Shown: positions 23,688 through 48,898 of the stretch, one piece after another
Numbering within the stretch: position 1 is the stretch's first letter
Layout of the letters: every line of letters begins with the position of its first letter
IMG/VR virus record: IMGVR_UViG_3300032331_003609
Coordinates: 1 to 64,000 of that record
DNA: 64,000 bases
Strand: one strand, 5' to 3'
Program-made: the position numbers and the translations under genes
Notes under the pieces: generated by a model
The model's input: the letters and a program-made list of their open reading frames with translations, nothing else
Told to the model about the DNA's origin: nothing
Database searches by the model: none

Positions 23688-24101
23688 ATGAATAAAGTTT
23701 TGGTTTTAGTTAGGGGCCTACCTGGATCAGGTAAGTCTACGTTTGCAAATCTTGTATGGAACAATTATGCAATCTGCGAGGCAGACAAATTCTTTTATGA
23801 CAAAGAGGGTAATTATAATTTTGATGCATCTAAGTTAAAACAAGCACATGAATGGTGCCAAAATCAGGTTGAGACTAAGATGCAGGACAATCAAAACAAT
23901 CCACAATTTTACCCAGAAATTGTTGTTTCTAATACATTCACTCAAGAATGGGAGATGCAAGCATATTTTAATTTGGCTAAAAAATATGATTATAAAATTT
24001 TTTCAGTTATAGTTGAAAATAGACACGGCAGTACAAACGTGCATGGTGTTCCTGATGATACGCTTAAAAAAATGATGGATCGTTTTCAAATATCATTATA
24101 A
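23688..24101 (+). CDS. P-loop kinase (AAA_33 / N4BP2- or PNK-like)
   Basis: VRGLPGSGKST, EADKFF, AHEWCQ, IVVSNTF and HGVP motifs. Confidence 0.85.
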   Translation: MNKVLVLVRGLPGSGKSTFANLVWNNYAICEADKFFYDKEGNYNFDASKLKQAHEWCQNQVETKMQDNQNNPQFYPEIVVSNTFTQEWEMQAYFNLAKKYDYKIFSVIVENRHGSTNVHGVPDDTLKKMMDRFQISL

Positions 24102-24162
24102 ATTTACATTTATTTTTTTTATAAGGAGGTAATTTTTCGGTATCGGTTAGATATATAAACTG

Positions 24163-24294
24163 AAAAAATCCTCATTCCGTGAAAAAGATACGACCTTTTA
24201 CGCGAAATAATTACAGTCTTTCAGGTACGGGACCACGACCCCCGATCAGAAAGACTTTATATTTGTCCCAATACAGGGAAAGTGTGGATTTTTT
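24163..24294 (+). ncRNA. structured RNA leader / sRNA, copy 1
   Basis: AAAAAATCC (24163) pairs with GGATTTTTT (24286); inner hairpins CGT..AAAAG/CTTTTACG, AGTCTTTC/GAAAGACT and TCCC/GGGA; late-type promoter directly upstream. Confidence 0.55.
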
Positions 24295-24311
24295 CCAATC
24301 TAATTGGAAAA

Positions 24312-24818
24312 ATGTTAAAACCACTTAAATTCTTATCTATAGCAATTATAGCTATTCTGTTCTCTTTCCAATCGTTTGGACAAGGAAAATCTATCCTAAT
24401 AGGAGACATCACAAATAAAATTCAGATCGGTAATTTAGCTGGGTCTAGACCTCTAACATTTGGATTCAAAAATATGTTAGAAGAATATCTCCAAGAAAAC
24501 AATTTTGACATCATAGAAGATGAGACCAAATTTGATTATAAAATCAATATAGATCTTCTATTCTTTGATGTAGAAACAACAAAGTCAAGCGTTGCAATAT
24601 TTCATAAAAACAATGCAGAGACAGTATTAAAAATAAAAGCATATCTTTTAGATAATAAAGGGAAGAAAATAAAAGAATGTTTAATAACGGAAAAAGCTTC
24701 CGAAATTTCCACGTCAACGTTGATAGTCGATGAAGGCGGGAAGATGAATCAGCAATCGGTGTCTACTGTTATTAAAAAGGTGTGCGGAACAGCAATAAAA
24801 CAATTACTAACACCATGA
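24312..24818 (+). CDS. exported CsgG/TolB-N-like alpha/beta protein
   Basis: Signal peptide; same layout as the clearer CsgG-like ORF at 34219 (ends STVIKKVC vs STSTKKAL). Confidence 0.5.
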   Translation: MLKPLKFLSIAIIAILFSFQSFGQGKSILIGDITNKIQIGNLAGSRPLTFGFKNMLEEYLQENNFDIIEDETKFDYKINIDLLFFDVETTKSSVAIFHKNNAETVLKIKAYLLDNKGKKIKECLITEKASEISTSTLIVDEGGKMNQQSVSTVIKKVCGTAIKQLLTP

Positions 24819-26488
24819 AAAAACTAATTCTACTCACCACACTCTTATTCTTTGTGGGAGTCTCGTGCTTTGCACAATTAACTGTAAATCAATCAGTATC
24901 ACCAACGACCGGATTGAAGGTCGGAGATACAATCTCGGTAAAGTATACGGTTGCTAAGGGAACTACAACACCTCGTTATTTTTGGTTAAGATACCAATAC
25001 AATAATAAAGCATTGGCTTATGTTTCAACCACATGGTCGCAAGGAACCTCTGTTCAAACTTACTATACGGGTTGGACTGGATATAAATTCACTGCAAGTA
25101 CAGCTAATAGTATTACCGCTACAAGTTTGTATGCACAATATCTAGCATCTCCTTGGGGATATGCAGCTAATGCTGATTGGAACGCAGGCCAACTTACTGT
25201 TCAAAGAACAGATGCATCGGTCGATGGCGACATTGCGACACAAAAATATGTTATTAAGGATCTCGGAGCTTATAACGATATTCATAAATTAGATCTATCA
25301 TATGCTATTGATGCTACTGGTGCCAATATTTCTCCGATTACAACAACAACAGGCTTAGCTTCATTATCTAACGTTATTGGAAATACGTCACAATTTAAAG
25401 TAAGAGTTCTATTTCCAACCGGATATGATATAGCTTCACATAGTGTCTCTTTAATACCGCTAACAACCAACGGAGATGTTAATTGGACAGCTCAAGCAAT
25501 TGCAACAAAATCACTAGATGCATCAGGGGAAGCTATATTTACGACAGAGACAAAGGTCGGTGATTCATTTGCAGTTTTTGTAAACGCAGCAATGCAAAAA
25601 ACTTTCATGAATAATATAGTAACAGTTTCAGATGCTTATAAAGCTTTCCTTGGAGTATCCCAAACAGATATTGCAGGAGCATCTACTTATTTCACATATC
25701 CTGTATTAGAGAAAAAAGTTGGTCTAGTAACTAAAAATAAAACAGCATTCAGCGAGAGCGATTCGTATCACTTATTTGCTAGTGTTATGGGTACGGACGT
25801 TTCTAGTAGTGCAATGATTCCTTCTAATGCTGCTCCTGTTAATGGGGTAGTTAATTTCAAATGGTATAATGGTCTATTAAATCAAAGTTGGCTGGATGGA
25901 ACACCAACATATAAAACCAAAGTAACAGCTTCTAATCAAGCAGTGGATATGGTATTTGCCTGGGGTGGTGATTTAGATTGGTCACACTCTTCTTTACCAA
26001 CAGAAATTTCATCAAGAATAGCCACAGGAAATTATGCAAATTCAATCAATCCTGGTTCTTCAACTGCAACTGCATATAGAACAATGTCAAACACATCAAT
26101 GGCATATACTGCAGCTCCTTTGGAGAATGCAACTCTGAGTGTATCCTCTAAATTAGAAAACGGTAAAGTTATATTAACAACAAATTTAACTAGAGCGGAT
26201 CTAGCAGGTTTACAGGTTATTATGAATTATGACGAATCTAAATTAACACTAGATAACGTGATATTTGATGCGGGAAGTACAATAACAAACTTCTCAACAC
26301 ATAACAATGGCAGATTAACATTTGGTTCTATAGATCAATTAAAAACAGCAAGAATTAAACCAGGTACACCATACACATTGGTGTTTACCCCTAAATCAGC
26401 TTTAACAAACACTGCTGGCTTATTCTATTTTGTTCTATCCGATGCAGTTGATGCAAAAGGTAACAAGATAAATTTAGTTGTAGAATAA
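24815..26488 (+). CDS. exported cohesin/dockerin-like scaffold protein
   Basis: Signal peptide; IVTVSDAYKAF dockerin-like helix; GGDLDWSHS; C-terminal cohesin LQVIMNYDESKL; C-terminal half parallels the next ORF. Confidence 0.65.
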   Translation: MKKLILLTTLLFFVGVSCFAQLTVNQSVSPTTGLKVGDTISVKYTVAKGTTTPRYFWLRYQYNNKALAYVSTTWSQGTSVQTYYTGWTGYKFTASTANSITATSLYAQYLASPWGYAANADWNAGQLTVQRTDASVDGDIATQKYVIKDLGAYNDIHKLDLSYAIDATGANISPITTTTGLASLSNVIGNTSQFKVRVLFPTGYDIASHSVSLIPLTTNGDVNWTAQAIATKSLDASGEAIFTTETKVGDSFAVFVNAAMQKTFMNNIVTVSDAYKAFLGVSQTDIAGASTYFTYPVLEKKVGLVTKNKTAFSESDSYHLFASVMGTDVSSSAMIPSNAAPVNGVVNFKWYNGLLNQSWLDGTPTYKTKVTASNQAVDMVFAWGGDLDWSHSSLPTEISSRIATGNYANSINPGSSTATAYRTMSNTSMAYTAAPLENATLSVSSKLENGKVILTTNLTRADLAGLQVIMNYDESKLTLDNVIFDAGSTITNFSTHNNGRLTFGSIDQLKTARIKPGTPYTLVFTPKSALTNTAGLFYFVLSDAVDAKGNKINLVVE

Positions 26489-26489
26489 T

Positions 26490-29069
26490 ATGAAGAAATT
26501 ACTAACAGTTTTATTATTATTGGTATCTTTTTTGGGGTTTGGACAGGGCGTATCTGCACCAGACCCTAAATCATTTACTGCTAGTACTAGCGGTCAAGAT
26601 GCTAGCGGATTTGAATTAACAGGATTTAGTGCAACATCAACTTTACTTACATCAATCAGTTTAGTTAATCCACCTTCCGGTACAACATTCTCTTTAGGAA
26701 CAATAACAGGTTTAACTGCTGCAAGTGGATTTACTTTAACGGGTAATAAAACTCGTTTAGTAGTAACTGGAACAATGGCTAGTATCAATACGGCATTAGC
26801 ATCATTAAAGATAAACACAGGAACAATAACGGGAGATATTAATATTTCAGTAGCAGCAACTGTAAACCCAACGGGATATTATTTTAATGGTGTAAACGGA
26901 CACTTTTATAAACCCGTATCAACCGGAGCATATTACACAGTAGCTAGAGATGCAGCATTAGCAACAACATTCAAAGGACAGAAGGGATATTTGGTAACAA
27001 TTACTTCTGCAGATGAAGATGCATTTATTTATAATAATGTACCTCAATCAAATATTTGGTTTGCATTAACCGATGAAGTAAGTGAAGCTAGATGGATAAT
27101 AGATGCTGGACCTGAAAAAGGAACTCTGATTAAAATAAATAACGGACAAACAAACGGAAACATTCCTGGTCAATATAACAACTGGGCAGGTGGTGAACCA
27201 AACAATAGTGGTAACGAAGATTATGCAGTAACTAAATGGGGTGGTGGTACTCAATGGAATGATTTACCAAATAACTTTAGTTGTGCTTATGTGATTGAAT
27301 ATGGAACTTGGAGTAATCCTGATGATGCAACATTTACTGAATTTTACACCAATTCAGTTGCACATTCAAACGGGGAAACTATTAAGGCACTATTTGGATT
27401 TAAGTTTAATAGTTCAATTGATAAAACAAAATTTTTAGCACAAATATTCAAAAGAAATGATTCATATTCAAGCTGGACAGCAGCTGATGGTTATAAATCA
27501 TTAAGCGGATTAGGTAAGGTGTATCTTTCAAATCAAATAGACACCTCAAAAGTTTTCTCGTCGGGTATTCCGTTATCAGGAGTAAGCGATATGACACAAT
27601 TTACTACTGCCGATATTGGTAAGATTTATAGAATAACTATAACCGGTGCAAATGGCGGCGGGTGGGGAACTGACATTTATACAAATGACTCGAATATTCC
27701 AGGTATGGCGGTTCATGCAGGTATTGTGGCAATCGGACAAACAAAAGAAGTTTATATTAAAGTAGTTGAGGGCCAAACAAATTATCCGGGCACAACTCGG
27801 AATGGTATATCAACATCTGATTGGGGAGGCTGGGATTTGAGTTATCAATTTGTATCTGCCCCAACATCATACAAAGCAACGGCATCACCCGGACAAGTTG
27901 AATGGTGTGCAATTAGTAAAAATTTAAACAACGGTAAAACTAGAATTCTAATTGACATGAGACAGATAGGAACTCTGGATCCTACTAAAATATCTAATTT
28001 AAAATTATTAGATGTTTATGACGGAGTGATATCTTATGTTTCCAATGACGCAACATGGGGACAATATGATATACCTTATGATATTAGTACTAAAATATTA
28101 ACATCAGCATATCCTAATAATTTTAGAGGATATAGCGGATACTACGGGGTTAGTATTGATTTTGCATTCACACAACAAGGTGCATTCAAACAGCACAAAA
28201 TGGAATTACAAGAGTATGATGCAACCCAATTAAAAGCTTTATATAATAGTATCGTAACTGTGTCCGATGTTTATTTAGCATTTAAGGAGTTAGCAAACGG
28301 TGGAATATTTGGAAATCAAACAGGTAATGAATTCACATACGGTATTCAATATAAAAACTCGGATGTTAACGAAGATGGTGTATTCAACGAGGCGGATTGT
28401 TTTGCACTATTACAAAACTTAACAGGAGCAAAAGATCTAGTAACATCATACACGTTAGATAATACTGTTAGATTGATTCCTGATTCAATTTATAATTTGA
28501 TTGGTAAATCTACTTGGAGTTCATTTCAAGATTTTAGAGGAAAGACATATAATTTTAGCTTAATGGATAACGTGTTAAGCTATAACTATGATCTGGCGGT
28601 TAGTTGGAAAGGCGATGTTAACCTGTCACATTCTGCAACACCTCCATCGAATAACGTAACAACAATGTCAATCAGAACAGCAAGTGCTGCGATACTAAAT
28701 GAAATGAGCGCTGCTATTATGACTGAAGTAATTGGAGATAGCGTTTATGCTTATATTACTATCGATCCTTTACAGCAAAATGTAGTTGGAACACAATTTC
28801 AACTAAATTATGATAATTCAATGTTAAAATTCAATAATGTAACATTTAAAACTAAAGGTTCACCTATGAACTATGGCAATGATAAAGGTTCATATATTAA
28901 TTTAGGATCTTTAATTAGTGATGGAACAACATCTTTAGATAACACAACAGAGTATAAAATATCATTTACAGCAAAAAGTAAATTGGATAACGTATTTGGT
29001 TTAATCTCTATCGGAACAACCGATGCAGTAAATAAATCTGGGATACAATTAAAAGTTAAATTAAACTAA
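26490..29069 (+). CDS. exported multidomain adhesin: C-type lectin + LCCL + dockerin + cohesin
   Basis: WAGGEPNNSGNEDY...WNDLP (C-type lectin); WGTDIYTNDSNIPGMAVHAG...RNGISTSDWG (LCCL); DVNEDGVFNEAD (dockerin); VVGTQFQLNYDNSML (cohesin). Confidence 0.8.
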   Translation: MKKLLTVLLLLVSFLGFGQGVSAPDPKSFTASTSGQDASGFELTGFSATSTLLTSISLVNPPSGTTFSLGTITGLTAASGFTLTGNKTRLVVTGTMASINTALASLKINTGTITGDINISVAATVNPTGYYFNGVNGHFYKPVSTGAYYTVARDAALATTFKGQKGYLVTITSADEDAFIYNNVPQSNIWFALTDEVSEARWIIDAGPEKGTLIKINNGQTNGNIPGQYNNWAGGEPNNSGNEDYAVTKWGGGTQWNDLPNNFSCAYVIEYGTWSNPDDATFTEFYTNSVAHSNGETIKALFGFKFNSSIDKTKFLAQIFKRNDSYSSWTAADGYKSLSGLGKVYLSNQIDTSKVFSSGIPLSGVSDMTQFTTADIGKIYRITITGANGGGWGTDIYTNDSNIPGMAVHAGIVAIGQTKEVYIKVVEGQTNYPGTTRNGISTSDWGGWDLSYQFVSAPTSYKATASPGQVEWCAISKNLNNGKTRILIDMRQIGTLDPTKISNLKLLDVYDGVISYVSNDATWGQYDIPYDISTKILTSAYPNNFRGYSGYYGVSIDFAFTQQGAFKQHKMELQEYDATQLKALYNSIVTVSDVYLAFKELANGGIFGNQTGNEFTYGIQYKNSDVNEDGVFNEADCFALLQNLTGAKDLVTSYTLDNTVRLIPDSIYNLIGKSTWSSFQDFRGKTYNFSLMDNVLSYNYDLAVSWKGDVNLSHSATPPSNNVTTMSIRTASAAILNEMSAAIMTEVIGDSVYAYITIDPLQQNVVGTQFQLNYDNSMLKFNNVTFKTKGSPMNYGNDKGSYINLGSLISDGTTSLDNTTEYKISFTAKSKLDNVFGLISIGTTDAVNKSGIQLKVKLN

Positions 29070-29962
29070 TGAAAAAACTATTATTAATTCTGTCACTAAT
29101 TTTGACAACATTTATGGCAAATGCACAGATACAAAAACCTGATACTTTACAATTATCACCAAAAGAATTATTTGGAGCAAGTAGTGATTGGAACAATTTG
29201 GGTATTTTACAATCATATGTTGATTTTTCAAAAGATGTTTTATCATCTTCAAACTTATCTGTTGGTATAATTGGAAAACAGGTATCTACCACTTTAAATT
29301 TAGGATATAGTAAGTCATCAGCGAATGGAAGGTGGAGTCATTCATTTGCGTCATCAATAAATCCAGTATGGAAGTATTATGGTGTTGGTTATGGTTTCAG
29401 TAGAAATACGGATAGGAGGACTACTACAATACAATCATTTTATTCAACGGATTTTGATTTTCAAAAAGATATAACATTATCATTTATAGATGTATTCAGA
29501 ACTAAAAAGTTTGGAACATTTGGATATAGTTTAATTGCGTCAAAATCGTTTTGGGGACCATATGAAGGTGAGTGGGGAGGAAAATACACGGTAGATGCTA
29601 ATGGTAACTTTTTGGATTTAATATACCCGATGAATCCACCATCGTCTCAAATAACTTACAAAGGTATGGCAATGTACACATATACATTGAAAACAAAGAG
29701 GGTTAATATATCACCACAAGTATTTGTTATGAGTGACATCTACAAGGTATTTAAAGATGGTACTACATCGGATTTAGCATATGTAGATGATTTCAATTTA
29801 GACTTATATTATGGTACATCATTGGATTGGAAAATAACTAAAAGATTTATTTTGAATACTAATATTAGATTTAATAAAACCTGGGATAAACTAAGTGAGT
29901 CGGTTGGTTATAAAAAAAGTAATCCAATAATGTTTATGATAGGAACAAACTTTCAATTTTAA
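29069..29962 (+). CDS. putative outer-membrane beta-barrel protein
   Basis: Signal peptide, alternating amphipathic strands, terminal GTNFQF. Confidence 0.65.
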   Translation: MKKLLLILSLILTTFMANAQIQKPDTLQLSPKELFGASSDWNNLGILQSYVDFSKDVLSSSNLSVGIIGKQVSTTLNLGYSKSSANGRWSHSFASSINPVWKYYGVGYGFSRNTDRRTTTIQSFYSTDFDFQKDITLSFIDVFRTKKFGTFGYSLIASKSFWGPYEGEWGGKYTVDANGNFLDLIYPMNPPSSQITYKGMAMYTYTLKTKRVNISPQVFVMSDIYKVFKDGTTSDLAYVDDFNLDLYYGTSLDWKITKRFILNTNIRFNKTWDKLSESVGYKKSNPIMFMIGTNFQF

Positions 29963-29965
29963 AAT

Positions 29966-30310
29966 ATGAAACGTATTAAAATTATATTATTGTGTTTCGT
30001 GGTGTCGTGTACAAAACCCGATTTACAGGTTCCTGCTATTGCAACCGACAAAGAATTTTTTACTGTGCCCGAAAATACGGTAAAAAATGGGGACGTTATT
30101 AAATTTAATTTAACATCTGCTGGAATGTATACCTTGACAATGACGGACGCAGTCCAAAATCAAGTGGTTTCTAGAGAAAGATTTACCGGTAAGATTGGTT
30201 TAAATTCGCTTAAAATATACACAAACTCTCTTTCAACAAAATACCTAAATGTTGAACTAAAGGATCAAAATAACAACCAAATAGGTAAAACAAAAATAAT
30301 AATAAATTAA
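29966..30310 (+). CDS. lipoprotein, Ig-like (T9SS CTD-like fold)
   Basis: VVSC lipobox; GMYTLT...LKIYTNSL...KTKIII. Confidence 0.6.
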   Translation: MKRIKIILLCFVVSCTKPDLQVPAIATDKEFFTVPENTVKNGDVIKFNLTSAGMYTLTMTDAVQNQVVSRERFTGKIGLNSLKIYTNSLSTKYLNVELKDQNNNQIGKTKIIIN

Positions 30311-30311
30311 A

Positions 30312-30686
30312 ATGAAAAAATTATCTTTCCTAATTCTAAGCTTAATAGTACTTAATAGTTGTACTAAGCATGATCTTCCTGAGCCAATTTCTCAGCAAAT
30401 GGATCCAAATCTTAAAATGTCTTCTTCTTTCGGAATTAAATTACAAAATTCTTTTGTTACGAGCGAGGTGTCTATGAATGTCAAAACCGAATCAGCACAG
30501 ACCGTAACTATTAAAATATATGATATTTCTAATAGAGTTGTTTCTAAGTCAACAAGTGAAGTTAAGTCTGGCGATAATCTTTTAAACGTATACACATCAG
30601 CTCTTCCATCTTCAGCATACAGAATCGCTCTTTATGATAGTAATAATAATCTATTAGGAATAACTGATTTTAATAAAATAAACTAG
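30312..30686 (+). CDS. lipoprotein, T9SS C-terminal sorting domain-like
   Basis: LNSC lipobox; VTIKIYDISNRVVS...LPSSAYRIALYD...F.K. Confidence 0.6.
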   Translation: MKKLSFLILSLIVLNSCTKHDLPEPISQQMDPNLKMSSSFGIKLQNSFVTSEVSMNVKTESAQTVTIKIYDISNRVVSKSTSEVKSGDNLLNVYTSALPSSAYRIALYDSNNNLLGITDFNKIN

Positions 30687-30731
30687 GAGTAGTATAATCT
30701 TTAAAAAATATTTGGTGAGGAAAAAAATCAG

Positions 30732-32258
30732 ATGAAGAAATTGTTGGTGTTATTTTTATTGGTGATAGCTTCAAAAGTAAATGGTCAGGTATTTACTCAA
30801 ACGTATGTTGATAAATGTACAGGAGAAATTAAACTGGTTGTATCTACTCCATTGCCAAATGGGGGTGTAATGATTGCTTTTTACAATCAGATAAAGACAT
30901 TTGATGTATCTCAGGTAAATAACGGAACTGTTCAAAAATGGTTAAACGATGTTTATCAAGACTATAGTACAAGACCATGCCCAGTAAGTACCGTTGTTAC
31001 ACAAACTGTTCAACAAACAGTTTCTCAAGCTGCAGCTGCGGCAGCAGCTTCAGCAGCAGCTTCAGCAGCTTCAGCAGCAGCTTCTTCTGCAGCAAGTGGT
31101 GCAGCATCATCTGCAGCAAGCTCAGCAGCTAGCGGAGCAGCTAGCGGAGCAGCATCATCTGCAGCATCGGGAGCAGCAAGTGGTGCGGCAAGCGGAGCAG
31201 CATCGGGAGCAGCAAGTGGTGCAGCAACAGGGGGTGCTAGTTCTCCGCCTCCTGCATCAAGTGGCGGATCATCTGGGGGTGGTTCTTCGTCAGGTGGTAG
31301 TTCTTCAGGGGGTAGTTCTTCATCTTCAGAAAGTAAAAGTAGTGGTGGATCTACGGAACAAAAATCCGAATCTAAGGCAGAAACTAAATCAGAATCAAAA
31401 TCGGAAAGTAAATCCGAAAGCAAAACCGAAGAAAAGAAAGAGGAAAGTAAATCTGAAACAAAAAAAGAAGAAAAAAAGGAGGAAAGCAAATCAGAAGAAA
31501 AAAAGAAAGAGGAAAGTAAGAAAGAAGAAGAGAAAAAGAAAGAAGAGGATAAGAAAAAAGAGGAAGAGAAAAAGAAAGAAGAAGAGAAAAAGAAAAAGCA
31601 ATCTATCAGTAATCCTACTTTAGTTGCTTCTGATGTTGCAATAACAGAAGCTAAAGATGGAAAATATGCCGCAATGATTTCTACTGGTATAAGCAAATCT
31701 TCTATGACAGGAACAGAAAGTTGGGGATTAACATCTATGATATGGACAACCTTCGATCAATTTGCTTTAAATGGTGGATATACTAAAATGAATTTTAAGC
31801 AGGGTAAATTAAAAGATATTGACTCATATTCAATTACTGCAGCATATTTGCAAGGAAATCTAATGATTATGCAGGGTTACACGTTTATTAAGCCTGATCC
31901 AAAAATAGGAACATATGGATATAATATAGGTGTCGTAAGTTTATTATTAAAAAATGGTAATAGTTATGATTATTCAGCATCTGTGTCTGCTATTGGATTC
32001 TGGACAAAGATTTATCCATTAAATAAGAAATCATCTTTGGCCCCTCAGGTTTTTATAACAAGTTCCCCAATTTCTTGGAATCCTTCAACCAATCAAACTC
32101 TTGTTAATAGACAGTATGGATTTATGACTGGATTCTCTTACGATTTTAAATTGACTGGAAGATTCGGTCTTAACTTCAATTATAAGTTTTCTGGATCTAC
32201 TCAACCAGAAACCCCAATATTGCACAATTTTATGATAGGATCGAGAATTATGCTATAA
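30732..32258 (+). CDS. exported protein with Ala/Ser/Gly and Glu/Lys low-complexity linker and C-terminal beta-barrel
   Basis: Signal peptide; AASSAASGA and KKEEEK repeats; amphipathic strands in the last ~210 aa. Confidence 0.7.
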   Translation: MKKLLVLFLLVIASKVNGQVFTQTYVDKCTGEIKLVVSTPLPNGGVMIAFYNQIKTFDVSQVNNGTVQKWLNDVYQDYSTRPCPVSTVVTQTVQQTVSQAAAAAAASAAASAASAAASSAASGAASSAASSAASGAASGAASSAASGAASGAASGAASGAASGAATGGASSPPPASSGGSSGGGSSSGGSSSGGSSSSSESKSSGGSTEQKSESKAETKSESKSESKSESKTEEKKEESKSETKKEEKKEESKSEEKKKEESKKEEEKKKEEDKKKEEEKKKEEEKKKKQSISNPTLVASDVAITEAKDGKYAAMISTGISKSSMTGTESWGLTSMIWTTFDQFALNGGYTKMNFKQGKLKDIDSYSITAAYLQGNLMIMQGYTFIKPDPKIGTYGYNIGVVSLLLKNGNSYDYSASVSAIGFWTKIYPLNKKSSLAPQVFITSSPISWNPSTNQTLVNRQYGFMTGFSYDFKLTGRFGLNFNYKFSGSTQPETPILHNFMIGSRIML

Positions 32259-32278
32259 AAAAAAGATATATAAAGTTG

Positions 32279-32396
32279 AAAAAAATCCTCATTCCGTTCG
32301 AAAGAAATTTACGTTTCTTCGTTCACTTTTTCAAATTTGATGGCTTAATGCCTGAAACTTACATGAAAAGTGAATTTCAAGTTTGAGTATTTTTTT
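32279..32396 (+). ncRNA. structured RNA leader / sRNA, copy 2
   Basis: Same 5-prime AAAAAATCCTCATTCCGT as copy 1; pairs with GAGTATTTTTTT; inner hairpins CGAAAGAAA/TTTCTTCG and TTCACTTTT/AAAAGTGAA. Confidence 0.55.
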
Positions 32397-32432
32397 CTAG
32401 TAGCTAAAACTAGAATATAAAAATAAAACAAA

Positions 32433-32744
32433 ATGAGCGAAGAAACACAAAACGACGGATCCTGGTCAGGTTTAAAAAAGACAATCGTAGGAGTATTAGG
32501 AACTGTAGTAACAGCAGGAGGAGTATTTTTAACTACTCTATTAGGCGGGGGAGATAAAGAAGCAGCACAGCCTGCTGCAGCACCCGTAATCAACATTACA
32601 AATTCAAATCAACAACAATCTGCAGGTAAAACCGTGATTATTCAAGGCGGAGGTAATGCAGGAGCAGCTAAACCCGCTGCACCAGCACCAAAGCCAAAGA
32701 AGAAAGAAGGTGACGAATTTAAAGAGGAAGCACCAAAATGGTAA
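32433..32744 (+). CDS. single-TM protein with Pro/Ala-rich tail
   Basis: IVGVLGTVVTAGGVFLTTLL. Confidence 0.7.
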   Translation: MSEETQNDGSWSGLKKTIVGVLGTVVTAGGVFLTTLLGGGDKEAAQPAAAPVINITNSNQQQSAGKTVIIQGGGNAGAAKPAAPAPKPKKKEGDEFKEEAPKW

Positions 32745-32842
32745 TAACCGGATATCAAATAGGTACCGTATTATTTTTTATGGTACTGATTGGATGGGTG
32801 ATTAATTGGAGTACAAAAATAAAGAACAAGAAAGATGAGTAA
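32738..32842 (+). CDS. small TM peptide (34 aa)
   Basis: Translated by hand: MVITGYQIGTVLFFMVLIGWVINWSTKIKNKKDE; overlaps both neighbours. Confidence 0.45.
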   Translation: MVITGYQIGTVLFFMVLIGWVINWSTKIKNKKDE

Positions 32843-33401
32843 ACAAGAAACACCAAGCGGATTTAAAGACCTATTAAATGCAATGATGACACGTAGATGG
32901 TACATCACTGCATTAGTATTGGGAGGATTCATGTTAATAATAGCAGGAATGTTTGCAGCTATAGGGGTAGGTACAAAAATGGCAGGAGAATGGAAAGAAC
33001 TTCTTCTATTATTACTAGGAGCTTTCATCGGCTCTTATGGTAAAATTATTGACTACTGGTTTTCTGATACTGATAAAGATAAAATGCTAGTTCAGAAAAT
33101 GGACGAGGAGGATGGTACTACTTTATCTCACACTAATGATATGAAGGAAACAAATAAGCCATATGCCCCAACCATTCCTGATGCATTTATTGTGGGAGCA
33201 CAAGCTGCTAGAGAATTAGCTGTAGTAGAAAATAATCAAAATTTTGAACTAGTTAAAGATCAACAAGAGCATGAGCAAGAAATGGAAAAGCTTGAATATG
33301 AATCACACAGACAATGCGAGCATGAGTGGGGTGATTCAGATCATGACGGACACGAAGAATGTCAAAAATGCGGATTATTAAGAGAAAATTTCGAGGGATA
33401 A
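32835..33401 (+). CDS. two-TM membrane protein with coiled coil and C-terminal Cys/His cluster
   Basis: Two hydrophobic helices; CEHEW..SDHDGHEECQKCG. Confidence 0.7.
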   Translation: MSKQETPSGFKDLLNAMMTRRWYITALVLGGFMLIIAGMFAAIGVGTKMAGEWKELLLLLLGAFIGSYGKIIDYWFSDTDKDKMLVQKMDEEDGTTLSHTNDMKETNKPYAPTIPDAFIVGAQAARELAVVENNQNFELVKDQQEHEQEMEKLEYESHRQCEHEWGDSDHDGHEECQKCGLLRENFEG

Positions 33402-35003: not shown

Positions 35004-35651
35004 ATGAATTTAAAACACGACAATTCCACATCAAGCATCATAGTAGTGGTGCTATTCTTAGTAATTTCCCAGTTCTTGTATAGCTGTAAGAATAATAGCT
35101 CACCAAGAAAAATATCAGGCAAAGAAAGGGATTCGATTGGAAAAATATCTTCGGATACAGCATTTATACACGACACCCTATATGTCGATGTTCCATTTCC
35201 ATTCCAAGTTTTAAAAGACACTATAATTTACAGAGATATTCCTGCTGTTGTTGATACGATGGCAATATTAAGCATTTATAATGCAAAAAAAGTTAAGATC
35301 GATACTCTTAAAATTGATTACGGGTATATTACAGTCACTGATACTATATCAGGAGGTGATATTATTTCTAGAAAATACCTTTCTAAGATTAAAGTACCGG
35401 TTAAAGAGAAAATTCAAAAGATAAAAGAAGAACCTAGGGGTAATCTATATTTGGGTCTGAATGGGGGTTTAGATAAACCTAATTATGTTTATTCCCTGGG
35501 AACTTCTTTTCTATATAAAACACCGCAAGATAAGATTTTTGAGCTTGGGTTTGGTGTTTGGAATAAGACAGCAAATGGAATAGATGGTGAATTTGTTCCG
35601 TATATAAAAGGTGGTGTTTATTGGAAGATCAACCTTAAAGGTAAGAAATAA
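35004..35651 (+). CDS. lipoprotein with DTxx beta-rich stalk and C-terminal beta-strands (spanin-like or OMP)
   Basis: LYSC lipobox; DTLYV, DTIIY, DTLKI repeats; YLGLNGG...GGVYWKI. Confidence 0.6.
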   Translation: MNLKHDNSTSSIIVVVLFLVISQFLYSCKNNSSPRKISGKERDSIGKISSDTAFIHDTLYVDVPFPFQVLKDTIIYRDIPAVVDTMAILSIYNAKKVKIDTLKIDYGYITVTDTISGGDIISRKYLSKIKVPVKEKIQKIKEEPRGNLYLGLNGGLDKPNYVYSLGTSFLYKTPQDKIFELGFGVWNKTANGIDGEFVPYIKGGVYWKINLKGKK

Positions 35652-46710: not shown

Positions 46711-46784
46711 TACAGAAGATCCGGAATAATTTTTATAAAACATTTTTATTTTCGGGGAAACTATTCTATATTTGCATATATAAA

Positions 46785-47238
46785 CATCTAAACAAAAAAG
46801 TTCTTTAAAATATTGGTTGTTAAAGTTGAAGCGGCAGAATTTGGTACATCAAAAATCAATTATGCAAGGAAACAGTTTGGTCTCGTATCAAATTTATCCA
46901 AACACTATCTTACCCGTTCTAATAGGGTAGATGCATCGGACGCCAAGCGACTGGTGAAAAATTTAGATATTCTGAAAAGAAATTCAGGGCGGCTGACCGG
47001 CCTTAAGGGTTAGAGAATCGTTCACTTAATGGACAACCCCAAATCTGGGGATTCTCAGCGAACAACAACTAATTAATAAAATACTATCCGATGCGGGATA
47101 GGGAGTTACATCAAGGCAAACGAAAAAAAAACTCCCTTTCAATATTCTCGGTAAGTTATTTCTAAAATGCAATTCACAAATTTGTGTTTGTTTATAATAT
47201 AGGAAGAAGCTTATCGTCAATCGGTAGGCTTTTTTTTT
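46785..47238 (+). ncRNA. structured Y-RNA-like locus upstream of Ro60
   Basis: Own promoter elements (TATATTTG 46767, CATATATAAA 46775) and terminator. Two units GA(A/T)GCGG-N10-TACATC at 46828 and 47090, whose N10 pairs downstream, flank a multi-stem central domain closed by GCATCGGA/TCCGATGC. Confidence 0.6.
47207..47238 (+). terminator. intrinsic terminator between the RNA locus and the TROVE gene
   Basis: AAGCTTATCG/CGGTAGGCTT 10-bp stem (GU pairs) plus T-run. Confidence 0.7.
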
Positions 47239-47260
47239 GTCAAAAATTAAAAACAAACAT

Positions 47261-48898
47261 ATGAGCAAGTTATCAGAATACGCAGTTAAATCCAAATCAG
47301 AAACTAGAAAATACGAGGACCTAGTGGTAGAGAATTTTATGGGGGGTAATTCCTATAAACTTTCTCCCTTGCAAACTCTTAAAATAGTGGCTGCTAGTTC
47401 TATCTTCGGTGAGCCTCAGTATTATAAGAATGGCATAAAATCTGAGGCATCTATCAAGAATCATGATACACTATTGGAATATTCTATATTTTCAGATCTT
47501 ATTAAGGATTCTACCTCTGCTGCAGATGTTTTTACGAACGCTATTGACTCATCCTTAGATTATGACTTCAAGGGAACTTTAGACTTAGCTACGGAGCTAA
47601 GAATGCTGTTTTTGATGAGGTTAAACCCTGCTGTCATTTTCATACGAGCTTCAATTCATTCAAAAAGAGCTGAATTCAATGAATCTAATCCAGGTTACAT
47701 GAAAACTGTCGGTAAATCGATAGCTCTTAGACCAGATGATCTGACAAATCAATTTGAGTATTTCATGTATGTGAATAAGACTAAAAACAAATTGAGCTCA
47801 ATCGTTAAAAGAACATGGGCAGAAAGACTTGGAGAATATTCAAAATATCAACTGAACAAATATAAAGGAAAGAGTCTAATTGATCTTGTTAGGATTTCAC
47901 ACGCTTGGAATAATAACATAGATGAGTTAATGAAGACCGGATCTATTAAGGTTGAGGAATCGGAAAGAACCTGGGAGAATTTAAAATCCAGCGGAAAGAA
48001 CTGGAAAGAAATCCTAGAGACTATCGAAATTCCGCACATGGCACTTTTAAGAAATCTAAGAGGTATTTTTAAAGAGATCGAAGATTTAGAAATTGCTAAA
48101 TCAGTCATGGAAAAATTATCTGCTGGTGTTTCTAAAGGAAATCAATTCCCTTTTAGATATTGGTCAGCATACAAAGCGGTAGAGAAAGAAGATGAGATCA
48201 ATCATAAAGGAATTATCTTAGATGGACTAGAATCTTGTATGGACATCTCAGTTTTAAATATGCCAAAGCTTGTTGGGAAAACCATATGCCTTTCTGATAA
48301 TTCAGGATCTTCTTGGGGACAATTGGCTTCCGAATACGGAAGTGTTCACGCAGCAGAGATAGCAAACCTTTCTTCCCTAATTACAGGTAAGCAGTCAGAC
48401 GAAGGTGAAATAGGATTATTCGGAGACAAACTTATCGTTGAATCAGTTTCTAAAAGAAACGGTTTACTTTCCCAATTAAAGGCAGTTAATGCGGTAGAAA
48501 GAGATGATAGTAGATTAGGTGGAAGTACAGAAAATGGTATTTGGATTTTCTTTGATCAAGCAATTAAAGAGAAAAAGCATTACGATAACATTTTCATATA
48601 TTCAGACATGCAAGCTGGGCATGGAGGTTTATATGGTAGCGACCCTAGCGAATATGAGGATTTCGTGCACAGCAAAGGAGGATGGAGATACATTGACGTT
48701 CTAGCTCTTGTTTCTAAATATAGAAAAGAGGTGAATCCGAAAGTTAATATTTTTTCAGTTCAGGTTGCAGGGTATGATAATACAGTATTACCAGAAAATA
48801 TTTATAGAGGAGCGATTTTAGCTGGATGGACAGGAAAAGAACCAGTTTTTGCTAAGGCATTAATCGATACCTGGAATGAAATAGAATCTACCAAATAG
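47261..48898 (+). CDS. rsr: Ro60 / TROVE-vWA RNA-binding protein
   Basis: NFMGGNSY, SIFGEPQYY, KYQLNKY, LIDLVRISHA, PHMALLRNLR, PFRYWSAY, and vWA SDNSGSS and IYSDMQ. Confidence 0.9.
   Translation: MSKLSEYAVKSKSETRKYEDLVVENFMGGNSYKLSPLQTLKIVAASSIFGEPQYYKNGIKSEASIKNHDTLLEYSIFSDLIKDSTSAADVFTNAIDSSLDYDFKGTLDLATELRMLFLMRLNPAVIFIRASIHSKRAEFNESNPGYMKTVGKSIALRPDDLTNQFEYFMYVNKTKNKLSSIVKRTWAERLGEYSKYQLNKYKGKSLIDLVRISHAWNNNIDELMKTGSIKVEESERTWENLKSSGKNWKEILETIEIPHMALLRNLRGIFKEIEDLEIAKSVMEKLSAGVSKGNQFPFRYWSAYKAVEKEDEINHKGIILDGLESCMDISVLNMPKLVGKTICLSDNSGSSWGQLASEYGSVHAAEIANLSSLITGKQSDEGEIGLFGDKLIVESVSKRNGLLSQLKAVNAVERDDSRLGGSTENGIWIFFDQAIKEKKHYDNIFIYSDMQAGHGGLYGSDPSEYEDFVHSKGGWRYIDVLALVSKYRKEVNPKVNIFSVQVAGYDNTVLPENIYRGAILAGWTGKEPVFAKALIDTWNEIESTK

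What the first reader, a model, noticed from the sequence alone, without database searches (positions are those of the whole stretch)
24150..32396. Twin structured RNA elements heading the two halves of the export island
Seen: at 24150 and 32265 the same layout recurs. GATATATAAA is followed after 3-4 nt by an identical AAAAAATCCTCATTCCGT, then two internal hairpins of different sequence (the first with TACG in its loop in both copies), then a 3-prime segment that pairs back with the 5-prime end and finishes in a U-run (GGATTTTTT; GAGTATTTTTTT). I noticed this 18-mer nowhere else in the window. Inference: a conserved ~120-130-nt cis-regulatory leader (attenuator or translational switch) or an sRNA family that co-regulates both operons. 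The paired ends with a U-tail would also suit Ro60 binding.
Basis: partly seen in the sequence, partly recalled or inferred. Interest (0 to 1): 0.7.

Follow-up and report, generated by a model that had tools for sequence, protein, structure and literature searches.

The report
Paired structured RNAs in jumbo phage
Two copies of a previously undescribed, roughly 120-130-nt folded RNA sit just after phage promoters at both ends of an 8-kb secreted-protein cassette in an uncultivated freshwater jumbo phage. They most likely act as self-terminating leader or small RNAs rather than as partners of the phage's Ro60 protein.

Summary
The 18-mer occurs exactly twice in the window and in the whole 244,850-bp phage record, each time after GATATATAAA. 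That 10-mer is the phage's general promoter-like motif. Its spacing to start codons puts the transcription start where the closing helix P1 begins.

I found 33 distinct relatives in viral and metagenome contigs. There are always two per phage, 7-8 kb apart, flanking the same cassette. None was found in 185,579 bacterial or archaeal species genomes, and Rfam has no match.

In all 33, the minimum-energy fold pairs the invariant 5' strand with a variable 3' strand that ends in the U-run (10-15 bp). Covariation is clear in the copy-1 type and not above shuffled controls in the copy-2 type.

- **Copy 1** abuts its gene, and its U-run can instead pair with the A-run at the start codon.
- **Copy 2** is followed by a second promoter-like motif.

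Best reading (0.4): self-terminating promoter-proximal RNAs. The invariant 5' strand would be a recognition site that decides whether P1 forms.

The Ro60 idea is not supported. The phage does encode a Ro60 homologue, but a separate ~430-nt RNA next to that gene carries a motif repeated upstream of the Bacillus phage G homologue. The twin elements lack it.

The parts
24150..24159 (+). Promoter-like motif GATATATAAA of copy 1
   Evidence: GATATATA is the most enriched 8-mer upstream of genes: 28 of 46 genomic copies lie within 45 nt of a start. Of 73 [GA]ATATATA sites, 43 lie within 60 nt of a same-strand gene start. The distance from motif to ATG is bimodal (12-15 and 22-31 nt) and never below 12.
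24162..24295 (+). Copy 1 RNA (134 nt). P1 5' strand 24162-24176; hairpin H1 24178-24204; long hairpin H2 24205-24264; hairpin H3 24266-24279; P1 3' strand 24281-24295, including the U-run 24289-24294.
   Evidence: The minimum-energy fold is -42.9 to -43.7 kcal/mol with z about -5.5. Model R1 scores 117.6 bits. Across 11 copy-1-type sequences, 87% of cells are paired and 7 pairs changed on both sides.
24289..24312 (+). Alternative hairpin: the U-run plus CCAAU pairs with AUUGG plus the A-run, which runs into the start codon
   Evidence: Folds of read-through transcripts. The hairpin is kept in relatives with a changed stem (CCAAU/AUUGG versus CCUA/UAGG). In the L024 group and in lineage C the partner lies just after the AUG.
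24312..24818 (+). First gene of the cassette: a 168-aa protein whose N-terminus reads like a signal peptide (by eye)
   Evidence: ORF list and translation. Homologues follow copy 1 in relatives, directly in 6 loci and after one inserted gene in lineage C.
32265..32274 (+). Promoter-like motif GATATATAAA of copy 2, 6 nt after the stop codon of the 508-aa cassette gene
32278..32397 (+). Copy 2 RNA (120 nt). P1 5' strand 32278-32291; H1 32299-32321; H2 32322-32374; P1 3' strand 32384-32397, including the U-run 32390-32396.
   Evidence: The minimum-energy fold is -25.7 to -26.9 kcal/mol. z is -2.3 against dinucleotide shuffles and -3.1 against mononucleotide shuffles. Model R2 scores 94.3 bits.
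32413..32422 (+). Second promoter-like motif GAATATAAAA, between the copy 2 U-run and the next gene
   Evidence: Conserved in every copy-2-type relative although the spacer around it diverges. About 20 sites of the AATATAA variant lie 8-39 nt before a gene start in the genome.
32433..32744 (+). First gene after copy 2 (103 aa)
   Evidence: The homologous start (MSEET... or MAEEM...) follows copy 2 in all lineages.

Best explanation
The two elements are paralogues of a phage-specific family of 108-141-nt structured RNAs. Each is transcribed from the phage's own consensus promoter, and the transcript begins at or next to the first base of the closing helix P1. P1 pairs the invariant 5' strand (G, an A-run, then UCCUCAUUC) with a variable 3' strand that runs into a U-run. 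P1 plus the U-run acts as a long-range, intrinsic-type terminator, so the default product is a small RNA with both ends paired. RNA polymerase that reads through copy 1 transcribes the secreted-protein cassette. In those read-through transcripts the U-run can pair either with the 5' A-run or with the A-rich start region of the first gene. Copy 2 stops cassette transcripts and yields the same kind of small RNA; the next operon has its own promoter. The invariant 5' strand is the recognition site for a trans-acting factor, still unidentified, that decides whether P1 forms. Shown: the repeat, the promoter motif and its spacing, family membership, two copies per phage, P1 in every fold, covariation in the copy-1 type, and the alternative hairpin. 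Inferred: the transcription start, termination at the U-run, read-through, and the existence of a factor.
For: The promoter motif is general, and its minimum spacing to ATG (12-15 nt) equals its spacing to P1 (12-14 nt). P1 of 10-15 bp is present in the minimum-energy fold of all 33 distinct relatives, although the 3' strand varies (GGAU, GGGU, GGGGAU, GAGUAU, GAGGGU and others). All 33 have z below -2, with a mean of -4.6. Copy-1 type: 87.4% of cells are paired against 40-59% when partners are slid. Seven pairs changed on both sides against 0-2 in the slid controls. None of 500 shuffles reached the observed paired fraction or covariation score. One example is U-A changing to A-U in the upper part of P1. 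There are exactly two copies per record in 5 phage records, 7.2-8.1 kb apart. Copy 1 has no promoter motif between its U-run and the ATG, and it has a conserved alternative U-run/A-run hairpin. Gene starts are A-rich and depleted in Shine-Dalgarno motifs, so occluding the A-run could matter. The 5' strand stays invariant while the rest drifts.
Against: There are no transcript data: none of the listed runs is RNA. The end of the element is not a compact GC-rich hairpin plus U-run, and the simple terminator scan does not call it. In the L031 group the U-run is interrupted. Copy 2 has a promoter-like motif downstream, so it cannot gate the next operon. The copy-2 and lineage-C group shows no covariation above shuffled controls. 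The structure tested was derived from the same sequences. No candidate factor was identified. Folding energy does not separate the two strands: the forward strand is the more stable in only 18 of 33.
Confidence: 0.4

Rival explanations
1. The elements are stand-alone, trans-acting stable small RNAs, such as a protein-binding scaffold or a decoy. In this reading their position at operon heads is incidental, and the paired ends and U-tail only protect the RNA. One version: the loops display the ACACGAC-type motif that also marks 5' ends and a start-codon hairpin of neighbouring mRNAs, so the RNAs would titrate a factor that binds that motif.
For: P1 starts at the predicted transcription start and ends in the U-run, giving a closed molecule. 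Copy 2 is followed by its own promoter-like motif in all lineages. The pattern of a conserved stem strand with divergent inner hairpins is typical of paralogous protein-binding RNAs. ACACGAC or close variants occur in loops of many copies. The motif also occurs at three conserved 5'-UTR sites at 33.7-35.0 kb.
Against: Copy 1 lies 16 nt from its start codon with no intervening promoter, and it has a conserved competing hairpin. Complements of the 5' strand are not enriched in the phage genome: 39 sites with up to 3 mismatches (41 counted, less the elements' own two antisense sites), against 10-46 for shuffled seeds. The loop motif is absent from window copy 2 and from the L017 group. The family is never seen outside the two syntenic positions.
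Confidence: 0.3
2. The elements are Y-RNA-like partners of the phage's Ro60 (TROVE) protein.
For: The phage encodes a 545-aa TROVE protein at 47261-48898 (Pfam 27.4 bits; PDB TROVE chains E = 1.7e-13; 48% identity to Bacillus phage G gp540). It is also present in three of the five relatives' records searched. The elements are 108-141 nt with paired ends, a conserved 5' stem strand, a U-tail and two paralogues. These are Y-RNA-like traits as described in PMC4201824.
Against: They lie 15-23 kb from the gene, whereas reported bacterial and phage Y RNAs lie within 4 kb on the same strand (PMC4201824). The GNCGAA(N)G and CGAA motif is present only in part of the family and not in copy 1. No tRNA-like domain and no Rfam Y RNA hit was found. 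A better candidate exists: a conserved, structured ~430-nt RNA directly upstream of the gene, with a motif repeated 5-6 times upstream of the phage G homologue. The twin elements lack that motif.
Confidence: 0.06
3. The elements are passive structural modules. They would act as a 5' stabiliser and/or an operon-end terminator, with no regulatory switch and no trans-acting factor.
For: A paired 5' end and a closed 3' end protect against end-dependent nucleases (established knowledge). Copy 2 sits 6 nt after the cassette's last stop codon, and no compact terminator was called inside the cassette on the + strand.
Against: Protection does not need an 18-nt sequence that stays identical across lineages whose flanking proteins are 84-92% identical. 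Here the 3' strand and all inner hairpins drift freely.
Confidence: 0.12
4. The repeats act at the DNA level, as recombination or protein-binding sites bordering a mobile cassette.
For: Direct repeats flank a 7-8-kb module in every phage. In lineage C the two copies resemble each other far more than in the window. A membrane-protein gene has also moved from behind copy 2 to behind copy 1, so the copies do recombine.
Against: A DNA site does not explain the kept complementarity of a diverging 3' strand about 100 nt away. It also does not explain the inner hairpins with compensatory changes, or the fixed spacing to the promoter motif.
Confidence: 0.05

Closest known systems
Promoter-proximal terminated leader RNAs of phage operons, e.g. 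lambda PR'-6S RNA-tR' under Q antitermination (my own knowledge, not tested here)
   Same: A strong phage promoter is followed within 100-200 nt by a terminator, so a short RNA is the default product and operon expression needs read-through. A conserved sequence lies in the first transcribed bases.
   Different: Here the terminator stem is formed by the 5' end of the transcript itself and encloses 2-3 hairpins. No Q-like protein or pause element was identified. There is no sequence similarity. The phage looks Bacteroidota-associated and has its own promoter motif.
Twin cis-acting antitermination RNAs: lambda nutL/nutR and HK022 putL/putR (my own knowledge)
   Same: Two related RNA elements head two operons of one phage. 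Each has a conserved linear segment plus hairpins.
   Different: nut and put elements do not contain their own terminator and do not pair 5' end to 3' end. Nothing here shows processive antitermination.
Y RNAs / YrlA (PMC4201824; PMC12135203)
   Same: Size of about 100-130 nt, 5' and 3' ends paired in a stem, the 5' strand of the stem conserved, a U-tail, several paralogues with divergent loops, and a Ro60 homologue encoded in the same genome.
   Different: The elements are not adjacent to the Ro60 gene. The binding motif is not conserved and there is no tRNA-like domain. Another RNA next to the gene fits better.
Riboswitch and attenuator leaders whose closing helix competes with an expression platform
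   Same: A multi-branch fold is closed by P1. The 3' strand of P1 is shared with an alternative helix that covers the translation start (copy 1).
   Different: The junction and inner hairpins are not conserved between the two copy types, so a small-molecule pocket is unlikely. Only the 5' strand is invariant.

Membership tests
Any Rfam 15 family | Covariance-model score at or above the family's gathering threshold | tested here: not met
   There were no matches in the whole window at gathering thresholds. At E up to 10, nothing overlaps either element.
Y RNA / YrlA | Encoded within about 4 kb of the Ro60 gene on the same strand (PMC4201824) | tested here: not met
   The strand is the same, but the elements lie 23 kb and 15 kb upstream of 47261-48898. 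The spacing is the same in relatives.
Y RNA / YrlA | Conserved GNCGAA(N0-1)G / CGAA motif near the 5' end (PMC4201824, PMC12135203) | tested here: not met
   Copy 2 and lineage C have (U/G)CGAAAG, but the first G of the motif is missing. Copy-1-type sequences have GUGAAAAAG and the L017 group UUGAAAG.
Y RNA / YrlA | tRNA-like domain (T arm, D arm) | tested here: not met
   ARAGORN finds nothing in the window. No tRNA-clan or Y RNA hit was found. No T-loop hairpin is visible in the folds.
Y RNA / YrlA | 80-130 nt with a stem formed by the 5' and 3' ends | tested here: met
   Lengths are 108-141 nt, and P1 of 10-15 bp is present in all 33.
Y RNA / YrlA | Bound by Ro60 | not testable with these tools
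   Complex prediction did not fold the protein-RNA job, so this gives no evidence either way.
Intrinsic-terminator attenuator | Stable hairpin immediately followed by a U-run | tested here: inconclusive
   A U-run of 6-7 is present in most copies (4, interrupted, in the L031 group). The stem is the long-range P1, not a compact GC-rich hairpin, and the scan does not call it.
Intrinsic-terminator attenuator | Mutually exclusive alternative structure | tested here: inconclusive
   In copy-1 types the U-run can pair with the downstream A-run at the start codon, and one stem pair changes on both sides between lineages. No such conserved helix was found in copy-2 types.
Small-molecule riboswitch | Conserved nucleotides in junctions or loops that form a ligand pocket | tested here: not met
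   Apart from the 5' strand, only scattered columns are invariant across the 33 sequences.
nut/put-type antitermination elements | Makes RNA polymerase resistant to downstream terminators | not testable with these tools
   Only the position at two operon heads is shared.

The most novel reading that the evidence does not exclude
The invariant 5' strand is the operator of a so far unknown phage-encoded RNA-binding regulator, in phages that appear to infect Bacteroidota, where translation does not rely on Shine-Dalgarno pairing. By opening or closing a transcript-spanning helix, the regulator would set both termination at the U-run and access to the A-rich start region. It would therefore co-ordinate a secreted-protein cassette and its neighbouring operon. 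The terminated small RNAs, with ACACGAC-type loops, could additionally titrate a second factor that recognises the same motif on neighbouring mRNAs.
Probability: 0.2. Interest if true: 0.7.

Novelty: new variant of a known kind. Interest (0 to 1): 0.5.

Why it matters
Regulatory RNAs of jumbo phages, and of phages that infect Bacteroidota, are almost unexplored. This is a clean, testable case: a compact RNA family with two copies per genome, an invariant 18-nt strand, and a helix that spans the whole transcript. It also sits where Shine-Dalgarno-independent translation could be controlled by covering an A-run. The same analysis gives this phage group a promoter motif with a likely leaderless class of mRNAs. 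It also points to a separate RNA as the probable partner of a phage Ro60, shared in motif with Bacillus phage G.

Tried and rejected
- **Rfam:** searches at gathering and at permissive thresholds gave nothing on the elements. An isrG hit at L002:224-448 lies over the low-complexity stretch of the 508-aa gene and scores far below threshold.
- **tRNA/tmRNA scan of the window:** none.
- **Sequencing runs:** only DNA metagenomes hold the region, and no RNA run was listed.
- **Complex prediction (Ro60 plus copy 1):** not folded, so it gives no evidence.
- **Single-sequence AlphaFold of the TROVE protein:** pLDDT 35, unusable beyond the helical-then-alpha/beta layout.
- **Trans targets of the 5' strand in the phage genome:** not enriched.
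- **The 18-mer in 185,579 species genomes:** 44 hits. None has the promoter context, and 14 are one recombinase-like coding sequence, mostly in gut Firmicutes.
- **Third genomic hit at 176308:** it has 2 mismatches and lies in a stretch that reads as coding on the opposite strand, so I take it as chance.
- **Small peptide coding:** rejected. Copy 1 has no ATG, and the short frames in copy 2 are not shared (read).
- **Strand choice by folding energy:** not decisive. The strand rests on the promoter motif, the U-run and gene orientation.
- **Pfam, PHROGs and NCBIfam on cassette proteins:** only weak or domain-level hits.
Full report
**What the window is.** The window is the first 64 kb of a 244,850-bp IMG/VR virus record, estimated 86% complete. 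It is a jumbo phage found mainly in freshwater metagenomes. Nearly all genes around the finding lie on the + strand. Gene starts are A-rich (50-60% A at -16 to -2). Shine-Dalgarno-like motifs occur upstream of 14 of 263 genes, against 35 in an in-gene control. Together with a weak type-9-secretion sorting-domain hit, this suggests a Bacteroidota host. That is an inference.

**Check of the observation.** The 18-mer is exact at 24163 and 32280 and occurs nowhere else in the window or the genome. GATATATAAA precedes both copies. Both stretches fold with the 5' end paired to the 3' end and finish in a U-run. The description holds, with small corrections to the spacing and to the number of inner hairpins.

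**The 10-mer is the phage's general promoter-like motif.**
- GATATATAAA occurs 17 times in the genome, almost always just before an ATG.
- GATATATA is the most enriched 8-mer upstream of genes.
- Of 73 [GA]ATATATA sites, 43 lie within 60 nt of a same-strand gene start. The distance from motif start to ATG is bimodal (12-15 and 22-31 nt) and never below 12.
- This fits a transcription start about 12-13 nt from the motif start, with one class of leaderless mRNAs.
- In the twin elements and all relatives, the G that opens P1 lies 12-14 nt from the motif start. The predicted transcript therefore begins with P1. This is an inference; no transcript data exist.

**Relatives.**
- Pattern scans and searches with the flanking proteins gave 33 distinct family members from viral and metagenome contigs.
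- Covariance models built here recover exactly two copies in each of five phage records, 7.2-8.1 kb apart and nowhere else.
- Synteny is constant. A polynucleotide-kinase-like P-loop gene comes first, then copy 1, then a cassette of proteins whose N-termini read like signal peptides, then copy 2, then an operon of small, apparently membrane proteins.
- No copy with the promoter context exists in one genome each of 185,579 prokaryote species. Rfam has no match.

**Structure.**
- The minimum-energy fold of all 33 contains P1 (10-15 bp). It pairs the invariant 5' strand with a 3' strand that differs between lineages and shifts register, yet keeps pairing.
- All 33 are more stable than shuffles (z below -2, mean -4.6).
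- In the 11 copy-1-type sequences, the six-helix structure has 87.4% of cells paired, against 40-59% when partners are slid. Seven pairs changed on both sides, against 0-2 in the slid controls. None of 500 shuffles reached the observed paired fraction or covariation score. This structure was derived from the same sequences, which favours it.
- In the 22 copy-2 and lineage-C sequences, a three-helix core has 78% of cells paired, against 32-62% when slid. Neither the paired fraction nor the covariation score clearly exceeds shuffled controls. The inner hairpins differ between subgroups.
- The family is therefore defined by the invariant 5' strand, by P1, by a hairpin directly after the 5' strand, and by the U-run.

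**Differences between the two copies.**
- In copy-1 types the U-run lies 15-19 nt from the start codon with no promoter motif between. The U-run plus the next few bases can pair with a downstream complement plus A-run at the start codon. The stem differs between lineages in a way that keeps pairing. In the L024 group and lineage C the partner lies just after the AUG.
- In copy-2 types a conserved GAATATAA motif lies between the U-run and the next gene. About 20 sites of that variant lie 8-39 nt before a gene start in the genome.
- Copy 2 begins 6 nt after the stop codon of the last cassette gene. No compact terminator was called inside the cassette on the + strand.

**Interpretation.** I read the elements as self-terminating, promoter-proximal RNAs. 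The closing helix is the terminator stem, and the default product is a small closed RNA.
- Copy 1 gates the cassette and offers a three-way competition for its U-run.
- Copy 2 ends cassette transcripts and makes the same kind of RNA.
- The identity of the 5' strand contrasts with its surroundings. Flanking proteins are 84-92% identical in the closer relatives, and the rest of the RNA drifts. This argues for sequence-specific recognition by a factor I could not identify.
- A purely trans-acting small RNA is nearly as likely. The two readings are not exclusive.

**Ro60.** The phage does encode a TROVE protein at 47261-48898. It matches solved TROVE chains at E = 1.7e-13 and is 48% identical to Bacillus phage G gp540. 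The twin elements, however, fail most Y RNA criteria.
- They lie 15-23 kb from the gene, have no conserved CGAA-type motif and no tRNA-like domain (PMC4201824, PMC12135203).
- Directly upstream of the gene lies a 550-nt gap without ORFs. It holds a promoter-like motif and the same 14-nt leader that precedes the phage's tmRNA.
- The gap encodes a conserved ~430-nt RNA with 101 predicted pairs, 18 of them with compensatory changes among four sequences, followed by a compact terminator.
- That RNA holds two copies of GA(A/U)GCGG-N8-10-UAC(A/U)UC. The same motif occurs five times in the 1.06-kb unannotated gap upstream of phage G gp540, and once more further upstream.
- This RNA is the better Ro60 partner. 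The twin elements lack the motif.

**Recombination between the copies.** In lineage C the two copies share their first ~55 nt and last ~30 nt. A membrane-protein gene that follows copy 2 in the window follows copy 1 there (55% identity over 84 residues). The copies therefore exchange sequence. This alone does not explain the RNA-level conservation.

**Verdict.** This is a real, previously undescribed phage RNA family with a well-supported closing helix. Its mechanism is inferred, not shown. The Ro60 link is not supported.

Noticed in passing
window 46711-47260 (RNA about 46814-47245, + strand): A conserved, highly structured ~430-nt noncoding RNA lies directly upstream of the TROVE/Ro60 gene. 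It starts after a promoter-like motif (46774) and the leader GTTCTTTAAAATAT, and it ends in a compact hairpin plus U9. Four homologues give 101 predicted pairs, 18 with compensatory changes. Rfam has no match.
   Followed up: partly
window 46828 and 47090; L128:1762-2330 (Bacillus phage G, upstream of gp540): The motif GA(A/T)GCGG-N8-10-TAC(A/T)TC occurs twice upstream of the window's Ro60 gene. It occurs five times in the 1.06-kb unannotated gap upstream of the 48%-identical phage G gene, plus once more at L128:285. It is a candidate Ro60-associated RNA module shared by distant jumbo phages.
   Followed up: partly
window 47261-48898 (+): A 545-aa TROVE/Ro60 homologue. Pfam scores 27.4 bits against a cut-off of 23, and solved TROVE chains 9kop_A and 9l5y_A match at E = 1.7e-13. 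It is also present in three of five relatives' records.
   Followed up: yes
G000:C1:80042-80466 and 80473-95637 (outside the window): The phage encodes a tmRNA (tag ending ANAPVALAA) and 13 tRNAs. The tmRNA is preceded by a promoter-like motif and by the same 14-nt leader as the RNA upstream of Ro60. The leader ends exactly at the mature 5' end.
   Followed up: partly
whole genome; e.g. window 48911, 63757, 21808(-): The promoter-like motif [GA]ATATATA shows a bimodal distance to the ATG. The 12-15-nt class implies leaderless mRNAs. A variant, AATATAA, precedes about 20 further genes.
   Followed up: yes
window 33735, 34985, 35015, 35168; loops of many twin-element copies: ACACGAC occurs 9 times in the genome, 4 of them within 1.5 kb of the operon after copy 2. 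In relatives it is conserved at the predicted 5' end of mRNAs after AATATAAA motifs and in a conserved hairpin loop just before the ATG at 35004. It or close variants also sit in loops of copy 1 and of the lineage-C and L029-type copies. Its function is unknown.
   Followed up: partly
window 23688-24101 (+): A 137-aa P-loop kinase (AAA_33; PHROG hits to ATPase, polynucleotide kinase and an RNA ligase kinase domain) lies immediately upstream of copy 1, both in the window and in lineage C.
   Followed up: partly
L008:10540-10983 versus window 32835-33401: A membrane-protein gene lies behind copy 1 in lineage C but behind copy 2 in the window. In lineage C the two RNA copies are also much more alike. 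Both points suggest exchange between the copies.
   Followed up: yes
G000:C1:125003 (outside the window): GATATATAAA is followed at once by a hairpin plus a U-run, which may be a very short transcript.
   Followed up: no
whole genome: Gene starts are A-rich and depleted in Shine-Dalgarno motifs (14 of 263, against 35 in the in-gene control). This is the pattern known for Bacteroidota and hints at the host.
   Followed up: partly
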